Below are positions 48,204 to 58,859 of a stretch of DNA of 64,000 nucleotides, piece after piece (position 1 is the first letter of the stretch; each line of letters begins with the position of its first letter). This DNA is from Utricularia gibba (lineage: Eukaryota; Plantae; Magnoliophyta): contig NEEC01000015.1 of assembly GCA_002189035.1 (NCBI GenBank), positions 682,001-746,000 on the forward strand, read 5' to 3'. The position numbers and the translations under genes were made by a program. Under the pieces are notes generated by a model. That model made no database searches and had not been told where the DNA came from. It was given only the letters and a program-made list of their open reading frames with translations.

Positions 48204-49558
48204 TTATACTGTTAATGATGAGTTTTTGGTGGAAATTAGGAGCCTCAGCTCCTCCAAATGTTCATCATTTGAAATGTGAAGCACCACTCGAAGATTCGTC
48301 AACAGTGTCTCCTGCTCCCATGTTAAAGGACCAGAAACAAATAAAGCCTGTAGAGTGCATCGATAAGCATGCAACTCTAACCAGTGTATACTCACCTCCA
48401 ACTCTTGGCGGTTGGGAGGTGAAGGAGAAGCATCCCTATCTGACTCTGAACCACAACACGACTCTGCATCACTACAAGTTGAGTCTGCCTCTGCGCATGT
48501 TGCGATCACAGGAAATGTGTAACAGCAGTTCACGCCACCCTGGCTAGTAATACTGCAACTTCCAACAGAACAAGCATCCTTGTCATCAATCCTTAACTCC
48601 GTGTTCCTGGACTCAGCGAGGCCAATATGATTATCATGCCTTGCCCTCTCCATTTGATTATATCTGATAGATATAATGTTATTGGAAGCATGCATGTTCT
48701 GTTCACCCAAAATTGGGTAAGCAACAGCATGTACCTTTTCAGGAATCACGTCAGCAGCCATTTTATTCTTCTTTCCTTTTTTCTCACTATTCTAAATTTT
48801 TGTATATGTCTAGAAGAGTTGCGATTTGCAGTTGACGAATCAAAGGGCGACATCCGCTTTCTGGATGGCAAAGATATCTCAGTAGGCTCCCTAATTGAAG
48901 TATCATCGTCGTTGTAAACATTGGTTGCTGCCAAATAACCAGCTGCTCGAAAATTCTACATAAAGCAGAAAGTTAGGTGTCACCATTGTAATGATTTTCC
49001 AGCAAATGCTTGAAAGATGCAAAAAAATAAATAAATAAAGATGTCATGGTTAAAAAATGTTCACAGGAAAAAGTATTTTTAGAGGAAACAAAGGCATACC
49101 TTCTCCATTAGAATCCATGTGTCATCATCCCAGGTTCTTCTCATCCTGATATTTGATATGTCAACAACTAGTTGGCATGAGCGTCCCAGTAACCTGACTA
49201 AGTATCGAGATCCAGACAAAGCAGCTTTCTTATAGGCCGTGCTCCTTCTACCAGCATGCTGAACTCGCAGAACCTTTAGAATAGCAGCAGCCTTCCACGA
49301 ATAATCATGAAAAACCTCCACAACATCTCCAGCATCAAAATTCTCAGTTCCATGCTCCACCATCACCTTAGAAGGGGATGGTCTAAGACAATCTACTGGA
49401 ATGTCTTCAACAATTCCATCAGTAGCCATACCGGGATATAAGTCATACTGCACAGTGCAGGTGTGAACATGAGACGACAATATCACAGCAGGTCGCCAAG
49501 AAATTGGCATCTCCTCGTCATTCATAACCTCCACTCTGTCGCCTTTTTTTAATCTCAT
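48204..49558 (-). CDS. Agenet/Tudor plus ENT domain chromatin protein; has a 5'-UTR intron
   Basis: MRLKKGDRVEV...WRPAVI, GDVVEVFHDYSWK, and C-terminal ENT (LELHAYRCTLQALFVSGPLTWEQETLLTNLR...ISNDEHL). Confidence 0.88.
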
Positions 49559-50487
49559 CTTGATCGTATCCCTTGAAGAAGCATTAATACCCTGCAGATG
49601 TTTAAGAGAAAAGTTCAGATAAATAAGTAAGCAAATCAAGGATCATGTACAACACAATGAATATTCAATTCAGATTCGTTGTTTCTCTTGCTGGTAATGA
49701 AAATCAGCCACCATTTCATACAAAATGCATTATCTGTAAACAGATCTTCCCAACAACTATATACATTTAATTTTCAGAACTTCATATATGCTTCTATTTT
49801 TAAAAATAAACTAAAAAAAGGATTCACAATTTTCAAAACCACAGCAACCAATATCATCACCACAAGTAAAGAATCGACTTCTCAGCACTACCTAACCAGA
49901 ACGTCAAGGGAAAAAATACATAATCCTCAATATAAAAACACCGGATACCAAAACCTCAACATCCACGGAAACATATCGATAATCCAAACATCGAATCCTG
50001 GATCAAAATCAGATTAAAATTATTGAGATTTTACTCACCGAAACACCAACAATCCAACGTTTTCTTCAAAATTCAAAGGAAATTCGGAGTCAGCGCTGTC
50101 GCAATTATGTGGCTTCAATCTCCGGATGCAGATTATCAACAGATTCAGATTCGCCCTTTTTGAAAGGCCTAGGGTTTGTATTCTGCGTTTGCCTTGGTGA
50201 AAGGGAAAAATATTAAAAAGAAAGAAGGAATGACATGACGCAGGTGTGGAACGGATTCCCCAATACATAGAACATACGTGTCATTTTAGAAATTCCTGCT
50301 TTATTGATTATTCGTTTTTCTGGTAGAATTAAAATAAATAAATAATAGGTTCATGATGCACGCATTTTCTGTTACCCCACGACACGCGCTTCTTCTCTTT
50401 GTCCTCTTTTTCCGGGATAAAATAATATATATTTTTTAAACTAATTTAGGTTTAAAAAAAACGCTTACAAGTCCGGGCTCATGTTAT

Positions 50488-51120: not shown

Positions 51121-54100
51121 ATGGAAAAAATGAACAAGAAGAAGATATTGGTTTTTCTGGATGTCTCAGTTGATGGTGATCCTTGTGAGAAGATGATTTT
51201 TGAGGTACTTTGTTTTTCTTACGTGTAGTGAGCCATGGTGTGCTTGTGCTTGAATCTGCTGACGTTTTTTGAATTCTACCGCGCAGCTTTTCACTGATGT
51301 GGCTCCCAAGACTGCTGATAATTTCCGTGCACTCTGTACTGGTAAGTGTTTTTCCATTAATCAGCTGTGCGCCTCTGCTGTGCATTTGCTGACCCTTTCA
51401 GGATTGATGATTTCATTGAGTTTATGTGATCAGGAGATAAAGATAGCTGCTCAAACTTCCATTCGTTTCGAAACATAGATCTATTAAGATTTGCTTGGAC
51501 CTTATACATGTTTTCTGTTTTGCTACTAGTAATCATATTTGAGGTGTTCAGAATTGTTTTTCTTTTCTGAAAGATGTGCTTCCGTTATTAAATATTCAGG
51601 AGAAAAAGGCATTAGCCTTACAACTGGGAAGCCTCTGCATTATAAGGGGACCTTTTTCCACCGCATCATTAAAGGATCTATGGTTCAGGTATTTTTTCTT
51701 CTATGAACTGAATACATAAAAGTGTGAGTTCTGAATGTTATCTTTGAAGCTACTCGATGATTGACCAGGAGTGATAGCCGCTTTTATTTCTGTCAGCTGT
51801 TGTTGTTAGTCCTAGTACAAGGCTGGTGGATATGTCTGCTTTTGTTGTGATATTATTTCGAGGTTCTGCTCACTGGGCTGTGCATTTTTTTTTAATTTTT
51901 ACTCAGGTCTGGTAGATAGCACATTGTCTTTTTTTTTTTCCAAGTTAATGATTGAAAGCGTTTTATTATTTTTAGGGAGGGGACCTTCTTCGTCGAGATG
52001 GTATGTCTTCCTAGTGTGAGAATAATTTGTGGCTGGTAGGTTATCTGACAGGAAATTGAATTTATTCATATACCGACAGGAAACTACGGGGAAAGCATAT
52101 ACGGTAGAAAATTTCCAGGTAATGACTTTTTTCTGTTTCTTAATGATTCGCTTGCCTGTTGTTGTGCTTAGAAGTGTAAAAATATTTGGAAGTATCATTA
52201 GCATGAGACCATAGAAGCTAGATTGGAGTCTCTGTTTTGTATGATTCTTTATCCTCAGCCTTTCCTATAATTTGTGTCTTGAGAACATGTGGATTTTCTG
52301 TCTATTGCCTGTGAAGGTTGTGGCTGATTTTGATCTTATACTCGCTGCATTGGAGCTTCAATGATATTGGAACAATTGTTTTCGGTTAATATGGTAGGGA
52401 AATCCAAATGTTACGGCTGTCTTGTTTGAACTAGTGTTGTGAACTTGGTAGCTGTAGTTTTTTTTTTTTTTTTGTTGGTACATTTCTGCTCAAACAGTTC
52501 TCCGTAGTTTTCCAAGATAATCCCTCACATGATGCCTCTTGTAGTCACCCCAGACTACACGATATATATTGGCATAAGATAGATACTGTTATTCTAGGAT
52601 TTTGAAATTTCTTTCGGGTTACTGATTACAGTTCTCTGTATTTAACATGGGTAGCCACTAATATATACTGAGAATTTCCAGATGAGACTCCGAAGCTAAA
52701 GCATGATGGCCCTGGGTTACTATCAATGGCAATTGCCGATAGAGATGAGAGGGGCTCAGTCTTCGGGATCATGTTGCAGGCAGATCATCACCTTGATAGG
52801 TCTATATTTCCTTTTTTTTTTTTTTCAAAAGACCTCTGTGAATTTCTAAAAAGTGAATGTTTTCAGCAACTTTCGTGTATTTGTCTATTCATATAGAGAG
52901 TATTTCCTATTCAGATACTTTTGATGCCAATGGCCCCTCAAGGCACGCCTATCTATGATTTAGGCTTTTGTGGAAGGGTAGGGAGGGATATGAATCTTTA
53001 TATGTACTGCTTTTGTTGATGATCGTCTTGCCTTTTCTACAGGAAAAATGTTGTCTTTGGGAAGCTCGTTGATGGTTATGATGTTTTGAAGAAAATAGAA
53101 AACTCCGGAGATGCTGAAGGAAGACCAGAAGTCACTGTGAAAATAATCAACTGTGGAGAACTACACGGGGGTAGAAAATTATTCTGCTGACATCTGTGCC
53201 TGCGCCAGTGTCTTAAATTTCAGATGTTTTGACCTTATACTTTAGCCAAAATGTTGTCTTTGCAGATAGTAAGAAGGGAAGTAAGTCAAAGATTGGGAAG
53301 CAAGCCAATTCGAAAATAATCAACTATGGAGAACTACACGAGGGTAGAAAATCATTATGCTGCACCTTTACCTGCGCCAGCGTCTTAAGTTTCAGACGTT
53401 TTGACCTTATACTTTAACCAAAGTGTTGTCTTTGCAGATGGTAAGAAGGGAAGTACGTTGAAAATTGTGAAGCACGCTGCTGAGGAAAGTAGTGATGAGG
53501 TAGAACATAAGAAAAAACACAGAAAGTCATCCTCGAGGAAGAGGAAAAGAAGAAGAAGATATTATTCATCTGAGTCAGACAGTTCAACAGACACTGATTC
53601 TGACACGTCTGAGTCTGAAAGCGACTCTGAATCAGATGAATCATCATTGAGCGAAACTAGCTCATCAGATGACGATAGACGTAACAAAAGAAAGAAATAT
53701 AAGAAGGACAAGCGTAAGCGAAGGAGAAAGAAAGATAGGCGTCATGAGAAACGGCGCAAGAGGCGGGATAAAAAGTCAAAACGTAAATTAAGAAGGTAAT
53801 GCATGTTCTGAAAGTCAAAACTGATGCAGGTTTATTTTATTGATTCAGTTGTCAACTCTTGGAATGCAGGGACAGTGACTCTGACAGTGAGGCTGGCAGT
53901 AAAAAAAGTAACAGCTCTGAAAAGGATGATGTAGTGTTGCCTAAAATGAATGGTAAGGCAGAGTTGAATGAATGAATCTCTGATTACCTTTGTGCACTTT
54001 CTAATTCTTGAATTTTTCATTATGTTAAGAAAATCAATCTCCTGAAGTTGGCAAAGACAAGGCTGATGTGAGTCGAGGGAACGGAGAGGCTGCTAGGTTT

Positions 54101-55554
54101 CCCGAACAAGTAGAGGCTGTGTTCCCACAAGATAATGGAGGTTATCAAGGTAATGGAGTTGAAGTAGGAAGGGGAACAGACAGAAATGGAGAGAAACATC
54201 CTGATGAAGTTGACGATCGCCCAAGCAAATCTGGGTATATGCACTGTGTTGTCTTCATCTTTCCTGTTTATTGCTCACAGACACTGCTACTAACTGGATA
54301 AGTGACACAGGAGTAGAAGCATAAGTCCTAGAAGAGCCGAGAGTAAGAGTATGAGCATCAGTCCAGGAAATGGTGCAGCCGTTACTAAAAAACGGAGCCG
54401 AAGTTCTACTGTAAGCAGAAGTCCACATCGGGTTTCCGGGAGAAGCAGGAGTAAGAGTCCAGTAAGGAGTGCCAGTAAAAACCCAGTGAGGGTCATTGAG
54501 GGAAGAAGCGATCGGCAGAGTTCTCTTCAAAGGTCTCCTCCCAGAAGAATATCAGCAAAATCAGTCAGTCGCAGCCCCGTGAGGTCTCCCAGACCCAGCT
54601 TGAGCGGGAGCTCCGGCAAGTCTTCTCAAAGAAGCCCGAGTAGAAGCCCTGTTAGATCATCTCGTAGAAGTGCTAGCAGAAGCCCCGGAAGAAGGCCAAG
54701 TAGAAAAAGCCGCAGCCGAAGTCCCGTGAGACCACCTAGAAGAATCTCAAGGAGCGGTGCAAATTCTGGCCGTTGGGCAAGATCACCTCCATCTGATCGC
54801 GGTAGGAGCCTATCAAGGAGTCCTGAAGATGGATCACCAAAACGAGTCAGAAGAGGGAGGGGATTTAGTGACCGTTACTCTTATGTCCAGCGTTACAGAA
54901 GCCGTTCTCCTGATCATTCTCCTGTAAGGTCTTATCGTTATGGAGATAGAGCTGACCGTGGCCGGTAATAAATCATTGCCTCTTTTCTCTTAGGACTTTC
55001 AGAGGCCTGGTATTCGTAACATTCTGCATTTATAATTCTTGCCAGATACCCTGGCTACAGAAGGTCACCCAGGCCTTACAGGAGCCCACCTCGAGGAAGA
55101 ACACCCCCAAGGTCTGTGTTTGCGTCATGTCCTTCATACTGCTATCAAAGTTTGGTGACAATTGTGCTGCAATTTTGGCAGATACAGGGGGAAGAGAAGC
55201 CGTACACGTAGTCCCAGCAGGTCTCGCAGCCCAATCCGATACCGGAACCGCCGTTACAGTCGTAGCAGAAGCCCGGGCCGAAGCCGCTCCCCAGCTGACA
55301 GACGTCGCGGAGGTTCGCCACGCATAAAGAAGCAGAGGTCACCCTCCCGCAGCCGGAGTGCTTCTGGGTCGCCACGTGTAAAAAAGCGTAGGTCACCCTC
55401 CGGCAGTCGAAGCGCCTCTGGATCACCGTCGCCCCGTGTCTCCGCGTCCCCCCCAAAATCACGTTCCGCTCCCGGGGATGCTGCCAAAGGTAAAGCAGGG
55501 TCGTCGTCCTCTGATAGCTCGCCAAAGAAAGGCCTGGTCTCGTATGGCGATTGA
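51121..55554 (+). CDS. CYP95: Multidomain cyclophilin with a C-terminal RS domain, CYP95-like; many exons, including one duplication-born exon
   Basis: [65 protein letters not shown], then S/D/K-rich and RS/SP-rich regions. Confidence 0.92.
53139..53475 (+). repeat. Intragenic tandem duplication (173-bp period) spanning an exon end, a whole intron and the next exon start
   Basis: GAAAATAATCAACT.TGGAGAACTACACG.GG|GTAGAAAA... at 53139 and 53312; both introns end GTTGTCTTTGCAG. Confidence 0.92.
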
Positions 55555-55957: not shown

Positions 55958-56161
55958 TCACTTGCGGCGGTTGTCCTGGGAGTCGACGACGCCCGGAGAA
56001 CGCGTCAGCTCGCGGCGGCGCATACCGACCATGTACCAAACGCCACCAACGGCGGCCACTCCAGCCGCCGCAAGGACGTAAGGGTTGTTGAACATCGCCC
56101 ACCGCCGCGAGTTCACGGCCTTGTGGGCGTCCGCCGCCGCCTTCTTCCAGTCATCAGCCAT
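55958..56161 (-). CDS. Uncharacterised 67-aa single-pass membrane microprotein
   Basis: ATG in good context (GACATGG), GC-rich coding-like composition, one hydrophobic stretch (PYVLAAAGVAAVGGVWYMVGM) followed by RRRE; site II-like motifs about 250 bp upstream. Confidence 0.6.
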   Translation of the reverse strand: MADDWKKAAADAHKAVNSRRWAMFNNPYVLAAAGVAAVGGVWYMVGMRRRELTRSPGVVDSQDNRRK

Positions 56162-57856
56162 GTCGGTTGGAAAGGAAACTCGGAGGAAGGCGCCCTCGTG
56201 TAGGCATAAAGCTTCGCAAACTGCATGAGGAGATTACGTGGCGCTGGCGGAGGTGTCAAACGTGTACCTCAACGTCCAGTGGGCTGTCGTTAGTCATTCT
56301 CCCAAAATAATACATACTATTTTTATCGCGTATTAACTTGACCAAACAGCCCCTAATAATAGCAAGTAGTTCAATGCGCCGTACACTGTCGGGCTTGTTC
56401 GAATAGACATGGATATGGGCCTGGTCCGTAAAGCCCATGGGCTACATGGCGCTTAAATCGTGCTCTTCATATTAGCACAAATAAAAATATTCAAATATCT
56501 AACAATAATAATAATAAAACCATGGGTCAAGGTTTGGAGTTAAACGCCATTGACTTTGGATCATATTAAATGTTATTTCCATTGTCCATAGTTTGATTTA
56601 AAATAGTTTCTGAAAAAACTATTTTAAAAAGAATTATGTTTCTAAACACGAATGGTTTTTGCATAAATAATAATAGAATTTTAGATATATAAAAATATAT
56701 ATAAATCCAATTTTTCATTTTCTTTTTATAAAACCAACAACCATTTCTCTTAACATCCACAAACAAATAAATACCTTTAAAAAATTTATTTTCGAGAGCA
56801 TCATGTCATCCCATGTTACACCATCATACCTTCATCCTCAGCAGTCAACGCATTTGGAAGCTTGCAGCAGTCAACTTGGTGCAAGAATGAACCATGGCAA
56901 ATAACAACGCCCTGAGGCAATACTACTCTACGAAGGGGTGTGATAATCGGGGCAGATGCATGCATCCTGCGGACACACATCCTTTCTTTACTGGTCTACC
57001 TCACTCGTGTCTGCGATGATGTCAGCACGTGTGGAGTTGAATCTTGAAAGTTAGTTAACTCTTGGTATATGAAAGGTCGTTACTCGTGTCGCCGCAACAG
57101 AAGAAGCTGCAGAGTCCCTGCAAATGGTCAAATACACGAGTGAAGAACGAGAGAAACGCTGTTTAAGAAGTGTACTCGTCAAAAGATTTTGCACGTATCA
57201 CGGCACAAAAAAACGACATATGGAAATATAGAGATTAAAGCTCTCAAAATTTTTTTGTGGGTTATGTTTTTACTTTTATTTTTATTAAAAATAATTTTGA
57301 ACAAAATAATGCTTATTTTTATTTTTTTTAACAAAAATATTTTTTAATATAATTAAAAATAAAATTAGAAATACAAATACAAAATAGTTATTATATTTCT
57401 TATTTCTATTTTTGAAGTTAAATTTTCAAAAATATTTCTATTTCTGTAATTTTTTCACGATACTACATTTTTGTTTCTATTTATTCAAAAAAATTCTATT
57501 TTTACTTTTTACTTTTGAAAAAAAATAAAGAACATTCAAAAAAATTTTAATAACACTCCGCTATTGTTCTCAGCTTTTCAAATCTAAGTTGTAAATATTT
57601 TCTCAAAACAGGACAAGCTTCCGAATAAGAACAATTGCAGAGTAGAATCAAATGTTCCTGAACAAAGCCGGGAACCAGATAGCCTGCACTGTATGCTCCC
57701 CGTGAAATACCCCAGATGCATTATGGTTTCAACATCATTTGCATCGGCTCAGAAAAACTTTGACCTTTGGCATCATTTGCTCGGCAGTCGGCTCTATATA
57801 TTATTTCCTTGTCCTTTGGCATTCGTCACCACCATTCTTCTCTATTTCGGTCTCCC

Positions 57857-58859
57857 ATGGCCTCTGTAGCCGTCGCCCTTCTTCTACTTTCGCTCTTCGC
57901 AGCTGGTTCTTGTCAAACGGGGTCATGGCAGAACGCTTACGCCACCTTCTATGGCGGCAGTGATGCCTCAGGGACCATGGGTTAGTTGTTTACAATGTCC
58001 TCATCCGCTTGATAAGATCTGTCATTGTAATCTGAACTTTCGAACACTAACATGTCGTTATATTCTGTTCACTCTGTCGAATCCAGTCATCTTTTTTTTT
58101 TTTTGATGGGGGAAATGCATGGGTGCAGGGGGAGCATGTGGCTATGGTGACTTGTACAGCCAAGGATACGGGACAAACACGGCGGCGCTGAGTACCGCTC
58201 TGTTCAATGACGGTCTAACGTGCGGTGCTTGTTATCAACTCCGATGCATCAACTCCTCAGGCAACTGCCTTCCGGGAACAATCAGGGTCACTGCCACCAA
58301 CTTCTGCCCCCCGAACTACAACCTCCCCAACGACAATGGTGGCTGGTGCAACCCGCCCCGAGTCCACTTCGACTTGGCCCAGCCCGCTTTCACCAGGATC
58401 GCCCAGTACCGTGCCGGAATCGTCCCCGTTTCCTACCGAAGGTGATCATGGGAACAGCAATAATAAATCTAACTCATCTTGCCCATCACATGCTCCATTT
58501 CAGCATCTTTTATATGTTTGTTCTTAGACATGTCATACTGAACGGCATGCCCACAGGGTCCCGTGCGTGAAGAACGGTGGGATCCGGTTCACGATCAACG
58601 GCAACTCTTACTTCAACCTGGTTCTCATCAGCAACGTCGCCGGCGCCGGCGACGTTCAGGCAGTTTCGATCAAGGGATCGAAGACCGAGTGGCAAGCCAT
58701 GAAGCGAAACTGGGGGCAGAATTGGCAAAGCAACGCGCTACTCGTTGGCCAGAGCCTCTCGTTTCAGGTGACCACCACGATGGGAAGACGGTCACGAGCT
58801 ACGATGTCGTCCCCGATTACTGGCAATTCGGACAGACATTCGAGGGCGATCAGGTCTAG
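57857..58859 (+). CDS. EXPA: Alpha-expansin, copy 1; 3 exons; apparent -1 frameshift near 58778
   Basis: Signal peptide, [14 protein letters not shown]|[54 protein letters not shown]. Confidence 0.93.

What the first reader, a model, noticed from the sequence alone, without database searches (positions are those of the whole stretch)
53139..53475. Exon and intron birth by tandem duplication inside the CYP95-like gene
A 173-bp unit was duplicated. It yields two clearly homologous introns (53171-53265, 95 nt; 53344-53437, 94 nt) with intact GT/AG ends. Between them is a chimeric 78-nt exon (53266-53343) built from the start of the downstream exon and the end of the upstream exon. The exon is symmetric (phase 1-1), stop-free and encodes [26 protein letters not shown], so inclusion or skipping both keep the frame. 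It repeats the last strand of the cyclophilin domain at the hinge to the RS tail. This is a directly visible intermediate of intron/exon gain in a splicing regulator, and the copies have diverged yet kept their splice sites.
Basis: seen in the sequence. Interest (0 to 1): 0.75.

Follow-up and report, generated by a model that had tools for sequence, protein, structure and literature searches.

The report
Duplicated intron and exon in cyclophilin
A 173-base stretch inside a plant cyclophilin gene linked to RNA splicing was copied in tandem, giving a second copy of an old intron and a possible extra 26-amino-acid coding piece; this is a real but ordinary example of a known way for genes to gain exon-intron pairs, and whether the extra piece is used in the RNA is untested.

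Summary
Window 53139-53483 is a two-copy tandem repeat of 173 and 172 nt, 88% identical (TRF score 539; blastn E 1.5e-56), with no other copy in the window. It lies in an intact CYP95-like gene (cyclophilin domain plus RS/KR tail, 51121-55554, + strand) of a Lamiales plant. The unit holds the last 32 nt of the final cyclophilin exon, the whole 95-nt intron and about 40 nt of the next exon. The result is two homologous GT..AG introns and a chimeric, stop-free, phase 1-1 exon of 78 nt. None of 267 relatives' proteins repeats the strand motif at the hinge. Four genomic read-through ORFs from other plants show one intron here, so the event is lineage-specific and the intron is old. This is the multiplication of a pre-existing intron by internal tandem duplication, a published kind (Arabidopsis TOUCH3; Gao and Lynch 2009), not de novo intron birth. 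Substitution counts fit neutrality. A consensus-strength cryptic donor lies inside the new exon. First-stage notes, mostly unchecked, report several similar duplications elsewhere in this genome.

The parts
51121..55554 (+). Intact CYP95-like gene: N-terminal cyclophilin domain in short exons, then a long RS/KR/SD-rich tail; stop TGA at 55552-55554
   Evidence: tblastn of Lamiales CYP95 proteins maps every exon in order with no frame break; Pfam PF00160 on the exon translations; sequence of the gene's end
53043..53170 (+). Last cyclophilin exon ('exon 6'); codons 53044-53169; ends in phase 1
   Evidence: Translation; Pro_isomerase 120-158/159, E 1e-6; matches the C-terminal 39-40 residues of solved cyclophilins
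53139..53311 (+). Copy A of the duplicated unit (173 nt): end of exon 6, intron A, first part of the new exon
53312..53483 (+). Copy B of the duplicated unit (172 nt): end of the new exon, intron B, start of the downstream exon
   Evidence: 19 substitutions and 1 indel over 167 aligned positions
53171..53265 (+). Intron A, 95 nt, GT..AG, 38% T, yUnAy-like branch candidates TTGAC and CTTAT
53266..53343 (+). Candidate new exon, 78 nt, phase 1-1, open, chimeric (start of the downstream exon plus end of exon 6); would add 26 residues to the hinge
   Evidence: not found in any relative's protein; inclusion in mRNA untested
53344..53437 (+). Intron B, 94 nt, GT..AG, 88% identical to intron A (10 substitutions, 8 of them transitions, plus a 1-nt deletion)
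53438..53795 (+). Downstream exon ('exon 8'), start of the KR/SD-rich tail; codons from 53440
   Evidence: Translation; 63-69% identical to Lamiales CYP95 tails
53302..53311 (+). Duplication junction: about 6-10 nt that match neither parental flank well (6/10 to 53129-53138; the last six bases, 53306-53311, match 1/6 to the sequence after copy B). They encode the Ala-Asn-Ser in the middle of the new exon
   Evidence: junction print-out; family D2
53281..53286 (+). Cryptic donor AA|GTAAGT (7/8 to AG|GTAAGT) inside the new exon; the homologous site in the downstream exon reads GTACGT

Best explanation
Shown: in this Lamiales lineage, a 173-bp segment of the CYP95-like gene was duplicated in tandem. 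The segment runs from 32 nt before the donor of an ancient phase-1 intron to about 40 nt after its acceptor. This multiplied a pre-existing intron and left a chimeric, in-frame 78-nt segment between the two copies. The copies have since diverged by about 12%. Inferred: both introns keep the same donor (GG|GTAGAAAAT), the same acceptor (TGTTGTCTTTGCAG|AT), the same branch-like motifs and the same U-richness as the ancestral intron. Plants recognise short U-rich introns individually. Each copy is therefore most likely spliced out on its own, so the 78-nt segment would be included in at least part of the mRNA. That adds 26 residues, a lysine-rich linker plus a redundant copy of the last half-strand of the cyclophilin fold, to the poorly conserved hinge before the RS tail. 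The change is probably near-neutral, not a new regulatory device.
For: The repeat is real and unique in the window. Frame, phases and splice dinucleotides were read from the sequence. The gene is otherwise intact. The donor core (-2 to +9) and the acceptor (-14 to +2) are identical in the two copies, and T content is 35-38% in the introns against 17-24% in the exons. Plant splice sites are chosen at the transition from UA-rich intron to exon (PMC3466422). The ancestral state is a single intron: the read-through ORFs P0001, P0253, P0035 and P0255 show exon 6, one intron, then the tail exon. Of 267 CYP95/CYP63-like proteins, 203 carry the strand motif, and only P0005 and P0015 carry it twice. 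Both are repeats of far larger cyclophilin segments, 81-153 residues apart. The closest relative, Genlisea aurea P0160, has one hinge. The start of the new exon matches the Genlisea hinge better (9/11) than the start of the downstream exon does (6/11). Where outgroups allow polarity to be read, 3 derived residues fall in the flanking exons and 1 in the new exon. That is the opposite of what a decaying pseudo-exon would show, though far from significant. The same kind of event is published: TOUCH3 and the Gao and Lynch cases, as cited in PMC4974935.
Against: There is no transcript, EST or protein from this species. Word searches covering 65-208, 207-660 and 270-861 aa found nothing closer than 83% in the last cyclophilin exon. 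Codon counts cannot separate constraint from neutrality (Nd 7, Sd 3, omega about 0.5, Fisher p 0.41; exon parts 9/72 vs intron 10/94, p 0.81). The donors are weak (4 of 8 matches to the AG|GTAAGT consensus, my count), and a stronger donor lies inside the exon. An earlier follow-up in this same genome (s1-195045) found a comparable duplicated donor to be silent.
Confidence: 0.55

Rival explanations
1. Silent duplication. The spliceosome joins the first donor (53171) to the last acceptor (53437) and removes all 267 nt as one intron. The 78-nt segment would then be a pseudo-exon that never reaches the protein and drifts neutrally.
For: Skipping keeps the frame (G|AT). Substitution counts fit neutrality. 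No relative's protein contains such an insert. The authentic donor of the second copy is weak. A comparable duplicated donor elsewhere in this genome was judged silent by an earlier follow-up (s1-195045; unchecked by me).
Against: Both internal sites are as good as the outer ones because they are copies of them. Plant splice sites are chosen at the transition from UA-rich intron to exon (PMC3466422), and that exon skipping is the rarer outcome in plants is my own knowledge, not a tool result. The new exon keeps more Genlisea-like residues than the downstream copy does.
Confidence: 0.3
2. Aberrant or regulated alternative splicing. The internal consensus donor at 53281 or the extra acceptor at 53245 may be used. 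The products would be a 15-nt in-frame micro-exon or frame-shifted transcripts prone to decay, so the duplication would mainly lower or tune expression of the gene.
For: AA|GTAAGT at 53281 scores 7/8, whereas by my count the authentic GG|GTAGAA donors match the same consensus at only 4 of 8 positions. A TTTAG acceptor at 53245 exists in intron A only.
Against: The sequence after 53281 is exon-like (20% T). The homologous position was presumably tolerated inside the ancestral exon. A 15-nt exon is hard to define. There are no data.
Confidence: 0.1
3. Assembly artefact or transposon insertion, and not a true duplication of the gene.
For: None found. Listed because only one assembly was available.
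Against: The copies differ at 12% of positions with a transition and CpG bias, which collapse or expansion errors do not produce. Both halves are homologous to the gene's own flanks, and no other copy exists in 64 kb. No RNA family matches the introns.
Confidence: 0.03

Closest known systems
Arabidopsis TOUCH3 internal tandem duplications (Knowles and McLysaght 2006) and the intron-containing internal duplications of Gao and Lynch 2009, as described in PMC4974935
   Same: A tandem duplication inside a gene copies an entire pre-existing intron together with exon sequence on both sides, so the intron is multiplied and an extra exon appears.
   Different: This is a different gene, and it has a single, fairly young (about 12% diverged) two-copy case. 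Expression of the extra exon is not shown here. I read neither original paper (Gao and Lynch is not held) and rely on the description in PMC4974935.
Potato RdRp intron gain by tandem duplication (Ma, Lan and Niu 2016, PMC4974935)
   Same: A lineage-specific tandem duplication in an asterid gene that crosses an intron-exon boundary and reuses the parental splicing signals.
   Different: In potato the unit crosses one boundary only, and the new intron needs a donor recruited from former exon sequence. Here the unit holds the complete intron, so no new signal had to arise.
Rogers AGGT model; vertebrate ATP2A1 (Hellsten et al. 2011, PMC3265369)
   Same: Tandem genomic duplication is the source of an additional intron.
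   Different: In that model a purely exonic AGGT-containing segment is duplicated, the intron is made of former exon sequence and the protein is unchanged. Here an existing intron is copied, and the protein gains 26 residues if both copies are spliced.
Plant CYP95/CYP63 and human PPIG (SR-cyclophilin)
   Same: An N-terminal cyclophilin domain is followed by a long RS/KR-rich tail. The best matches are proteins named CYP95 in Lamiales, and PPIG chains are among the PDB matches.
   Different: None of the relatives examined repeats the last strand at the hinge. The window's protein also stops about 8 residues earlier than relatives after GLVSYGD.

Membership tests
Internal tandem duplication that multiplies a pre-existing intron (TOUCH3 / Gao-Lynch type) | Two adjacent direct copies inside one gene | tested here: met
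   173/172-nt copies, 88% identical, head to tail
Internal tandem duplication that multiplies a pre-existing intron (TOUCH3 / Gao-Lynch type) | The unit contains a whole intron with both splice sites plus exon sequence on both sides | tested here: met
   32 nt of exon, a 95-nt GT..AG intron and about 40 nt of exon
Internal tandem duplication that multiplies a pre-existing intron (TOUCH3 / Gao-Lynch type) | The intron pre-dates the duplication, so relatives have one copy at that position | tested here: met
   Read-through ORFs P0001, P0253, P0035 and P0255 have one intron between the two exons. Relatives' proteins have one hinge. DNA of close relatives was not available.
Internal tandem duplication that multiplies a pre-existing intron (TOUCH3 / Gao-Lynch type) | Both intron copies are spliced, so that the extra exon is in the mRNA | not testable with these tools
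[quoted passage not shown] | The duplicated segment is exonic only, the new intron is built from former exon sequence and the coding sequence is unchanged | tested here: not met
   The unit carries a complete older intron, and splicing of both copies adds 78 nt of coding sequence
Tandem whole-exon duplication that gives mutually exclusive exons | Two homologous whole exons of the same length and phase, used alternatively | tested here: not met
   The new exon is a chimera of the ends of two different exons, not a copy of one exon
CYP95-like SR-cyclophilin | An N-terminal cyclophilin (PF00160) domain followed by an RS/KR-rich C-terminal tail | tested here: met
   Pfam hits on the exon translations. 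All exons align collinearly with CYP95 proteins of Genlisea, Castilleja, Rehmannia and Sesamum.
CYP95-like SR-cyclophilin | PPIase activity and association with splicing factors | not testable with these tools
   This is biochemistry. It is inferred only from family membership.

The most novel reading that the evidence does not exclude
The 78-nt segment is a true, regulated cassette exon that changes the linker between the PPIase domain and the RS tail of a splicing-associated cyclophilin. It would also be one of many recent intragenic micro-duplications in this compact Lamiales genome, for which first-stage notes list at least seven similar cases. Tandem duplication would then be the main ongoing source of new exon-intron pairs in this lineage.
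Probability: 0.1. Interest if true: 0.55.

Novelty: new member of a known kind. Interest (0 to 1): 0.3.

Why it matters
Young cases of exon-intron gain with both parental copies still visible are useful teaching and test material. Here every signal of the new intron can be traced to its source, and both splicing outcomes keep the reading frame. A single RT-PCR would show how a plant spliceosome treats two equal introns in a row. The mechanism itself is already documented (TOUCH3, Gao and Lynch 2009), and the affected protein region is a poorly conserved linker, so the single case adds little. A genome-wide count of such events in this species would be more informative than this locus alone.

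Tried and rejected
- **Same-species evidence.** The word search with the tail-exon translation gave only two foreign genomic ORFs. Full-length and mid-length searches through Sesamum homologues gave no protein above 83% identity to the last cyclophilin exon of the window, and no row marked as the window's own protein.
- **Representative search.** The search with the last cyclophilin exon returned 228 relatives. The entries with two matched stretches that I read were proteins with two whole cyclophilin domains or large repeated parts, not hinge duplications.
- **Metagenome scan.** A 32-nt stretch that lies wholly inside the new exon was scanned against the metagenome contigs, with no result.
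- **Structured RNA in the intron.** I looked for an intronic snoRNA, miRNA or other structured RNA as the reason for the duplication. The only Rfam hit is a sub-threshold sR42 match outside the repeat.
- **Transposon origin.** Rejected, because there is no other copy in the window.
- **Selection tests.** The sample is too small and the tests are non-significant.
- **Earlier notes of the scan.** Sequence and word look-ups for a second cyclophilin copy in this genome were blank.
- All searches were exon by exon, by reference.
- **Paper not held.** Gao and Lynch 2009 is not held and is cited second-hand.
- **Not human.** The contig is plant DNA.

Full report
**What is there**

- TRF reports 53139-53474 with period 172, 1.9 copies, 88% matches and score 539.
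- The repeat finder gives two blocks, offset by 173 and then 172 nt, each 87% identical.
- A pairwise alignment shows one 1-nt indel and otherwise only substitutions.
- blastn of the unit against all 64 kb finds only the unit and its neighbour (E 1.5e-56), so it is not a dispersed element.
- No Rfam family matches the repeat. The only hit in 52000-55000 is a sub-threshold one outside it.

**The gene**

- The exon translations hit Pfam Pro_isomerase.
- The exon at 53043-53170 matches the C-terminal 39-40 residues of solved cyclophilins, up to one or two residues from the chain end.
- tblastn of CYP95 proteins maps a complete, collinear gene from the ATG at 51121 to the TGA at 55552-55554, with a long RS/KR/SD-rich tail.
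- The nearest proteins are from Lamiales: Genlisea aurea P0160 (82-83% in the last two cyclophilin exons), Castilleja, Rehmannia, Erythranthe and Sesamum.
- An earlier follow-up of this scan (s1-181096) names the genome Utricularia gibba. Genlisea as best hit and the dense gene spacing fit that, but I did not verify it. The contig is plant DNA, not human.

**Anatomy of the duplication**

- Copy A (53139-53311) holds the last 32 nt of the cyclophilin exon, intron A (53171-53265, 95 nt) and about 40 nt homologous to the start of the tail exon.
- Copy B (53312-53483) holds the same parts. Its intron B is 53344-53437 (94 nt), and it runs on into the tail exon (53438-53795).
- The segment between the introns (53266-53343, 78 nt) is therefore a chimera of the start of the tail exon and the end of the cyclophilin exon.
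- All junctions are phase 1 and rebuild GAT (Asp), so inclusion and skipping both keep the frame. The segment has no stop.
- About 6-10 nt at the junction (53302-53311) match neither flank well. This may be filler or fast divergence.
- Donors (GG|GTAGAAAAT), acceptors (TGTTGTCTTTGCAG|AT) and the TTGAC and CTTAT branch-like motifs are the same in both copies.
- T content is 35-38% in the introns and 17-24% in the exons.

**Age and selection**

- The introns differ at 10 of 94 sites (8 transitions, several at CpG) plus one indel.
- The Jukes-Cantor distance is 0.115. That means roughly 4-23 million years, depending on the plant substitution rate assumed. This is an inference, and this lineage may evolve fast.
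- The coding parts show 7 non-synonymous and 3 synonymous differences (omega about 0.5, Fisher p 0.41). Exon-derived and intron parts diverge alike (p 0.81).
- An open frame is expected in about 80% of random-substitution trials.
- In standard splice-site windows I count 2 differences in 30 nt against 18 in 137 elsewhere.
- The retention of frame and splice sites is therefore no evidence of selection.

**Relatives**

- The representative search with the last cyclophilin exon returned 228 relatives. Together with the word searches through Sesamum homologues, 267 proteins were in hand.
- A short motif that recognises both window copies occurs once in 201 of them. It occurs twice only in P0005 and P0015, which repeat far larger cyclophilin segments 81-153 residues apart.
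- Four genomic read-through ORFs from other plants (P0001, P0253, P0035, P0255; P0253 is Solanum-like) run from the cyclophilin exon through one intron into the tail exon.
- The intron is therefore old and single in other asterids, and the duplication is specific to the window's lineage.
- Against the Genlisea hinge, the start of the new exon matches 9/11 and the start of the tail exon 6/11.
- Where polarity can be read from outgroups, three derived residues fall in the flanking exons and one in the new exon. This leans weakly against a decaying pseudo-exon, but it is not significant.

**Is the exon used?**

This could not be tested.
- No transcript or protein of the species turned up in length ranges 65-208, 207-660 and 270-861 aa.
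- A scan of metagenome contigs for a 32-mer inside the exon was blank.

On mechanism, plant splice sites are chosen at the transition from U/A-rich intron to exon (PMC3466422). Both introns are complete copies of a working intron. Independent removal of each, and hence inclusion of the exon, is the most likely outcome. I put it at about 55-60% for at least part of the transcripts.

There are three caveats:
- The authentic donors are weak. They match the AG|GTAAGT consensus at only 4 of 8 positions by my count, while AA|GTAAGT at 53281, inside the exon, scores 7/8.
- Intron A has an extra TTTAG acceptor at 53245 that intron B lacks.
- An earlier follow-up in this genome found a comparable duplicated donor to be silent (s1-195045).

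**Comparison with what is known**

- The review PMC3443670 lists tandem genomic duplication as the one intron-gain mechanism shown in vivo.
- PMC4974935 separates two cases. One is creation of a new intron (the Rogers AGGT model, ATP2A1, potato RdRp). [quoted passage not shown]
- The present locus meets the tested features of the second kind and fails those of the first. It is also not a whole-exon duplication of the mutually exclusive type.
- It is a new member of a known kind.
- First-stage notes, mostly unchecked, list several similar events in this same genome (s1-249073, s1-186823, s1-186893, s1-181126, s1-290764). The scan has therefore met this before on other DNA of this genome.

**Verdict**

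This is a clean, datable, lineage-specific example, but the mechanism is documented, the protein region is a loose linker and expression is unknown. Interest is 0.3.

Noticed in passing
window 53045-53059, 53248-53262, 53420-53434: The 15-mer AAAATGTTGTCTTTG at the start of the last cyclophilin exon (it codes Asn-Val-Val-Phe) recurs exactly at the 3' end of intron A and with one mismatch in intron B. In intron A an acceptor-like TTTAG lies just before it, which mimics the real exon boundary. blastn gives E of 0.03-0.15 within the window, so it is borderline chance. Other plants' read-through ORFs do not show it.
   Followed up: partly
window 53281-53286 and 53453-53458: A consensus donor GTAAGT lies inside the new exon. 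The homologous site in the tail exon reads GTACGT. Used with the acceptor at 53265, the first would give a 15-nt in-frame micro-exon.
   Followed up: partly
window 53245 and 53423: The two intron copies differ in their extra AG sites. TTTAG at 53245 exists only in intron A (TAA in B). CAAAG at 53423 exists only in intron B. Use of 53245 would shift the frame.
   Followed up: no
window 55537-55554: The gene stops (TGA) right after GLVSYGD, whereas Sesamum, Castilleja and Impatiens relatives continue for about 8-10 more residues. This is a small C-terminal truncation, or a missed last micro-exon.
   Followed up: no
protein P0005 (550 aa, source not shown), residues 136-175 and about 290-330: A CYP95/63-like protein of another organism repeats the whole last cyclophilin exon plus hinge about 150 residues downstream. 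It is either an independent, larger internal duplication or a merged gene model.
   Followed up: no
proteins P0009, P0153, P0010, P0160: Several public CYP95 models of relatives (Sesamum, Camellia, Genlisea) contain stretches that look like translated intron or wrong-frame exon, or skip the hinge exon. Annotation of this gene family is unreliable around the short cyclophilin exons.
   Followed up: no
window 57767-58445 (+), 55958-56161 (-), 49079-49639 (-): Neighbouring ORFs lie close by. Downstream is an expansin-like ORF, judged by eye from the GACGYG...CGACY pattern and not tested. A 67-aa ORF on the minus strand follows the gene's end. A 186-aa ORF on the minus strand lies upstream. The spacing is dense, as in a compact genome.
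   Followed up: no
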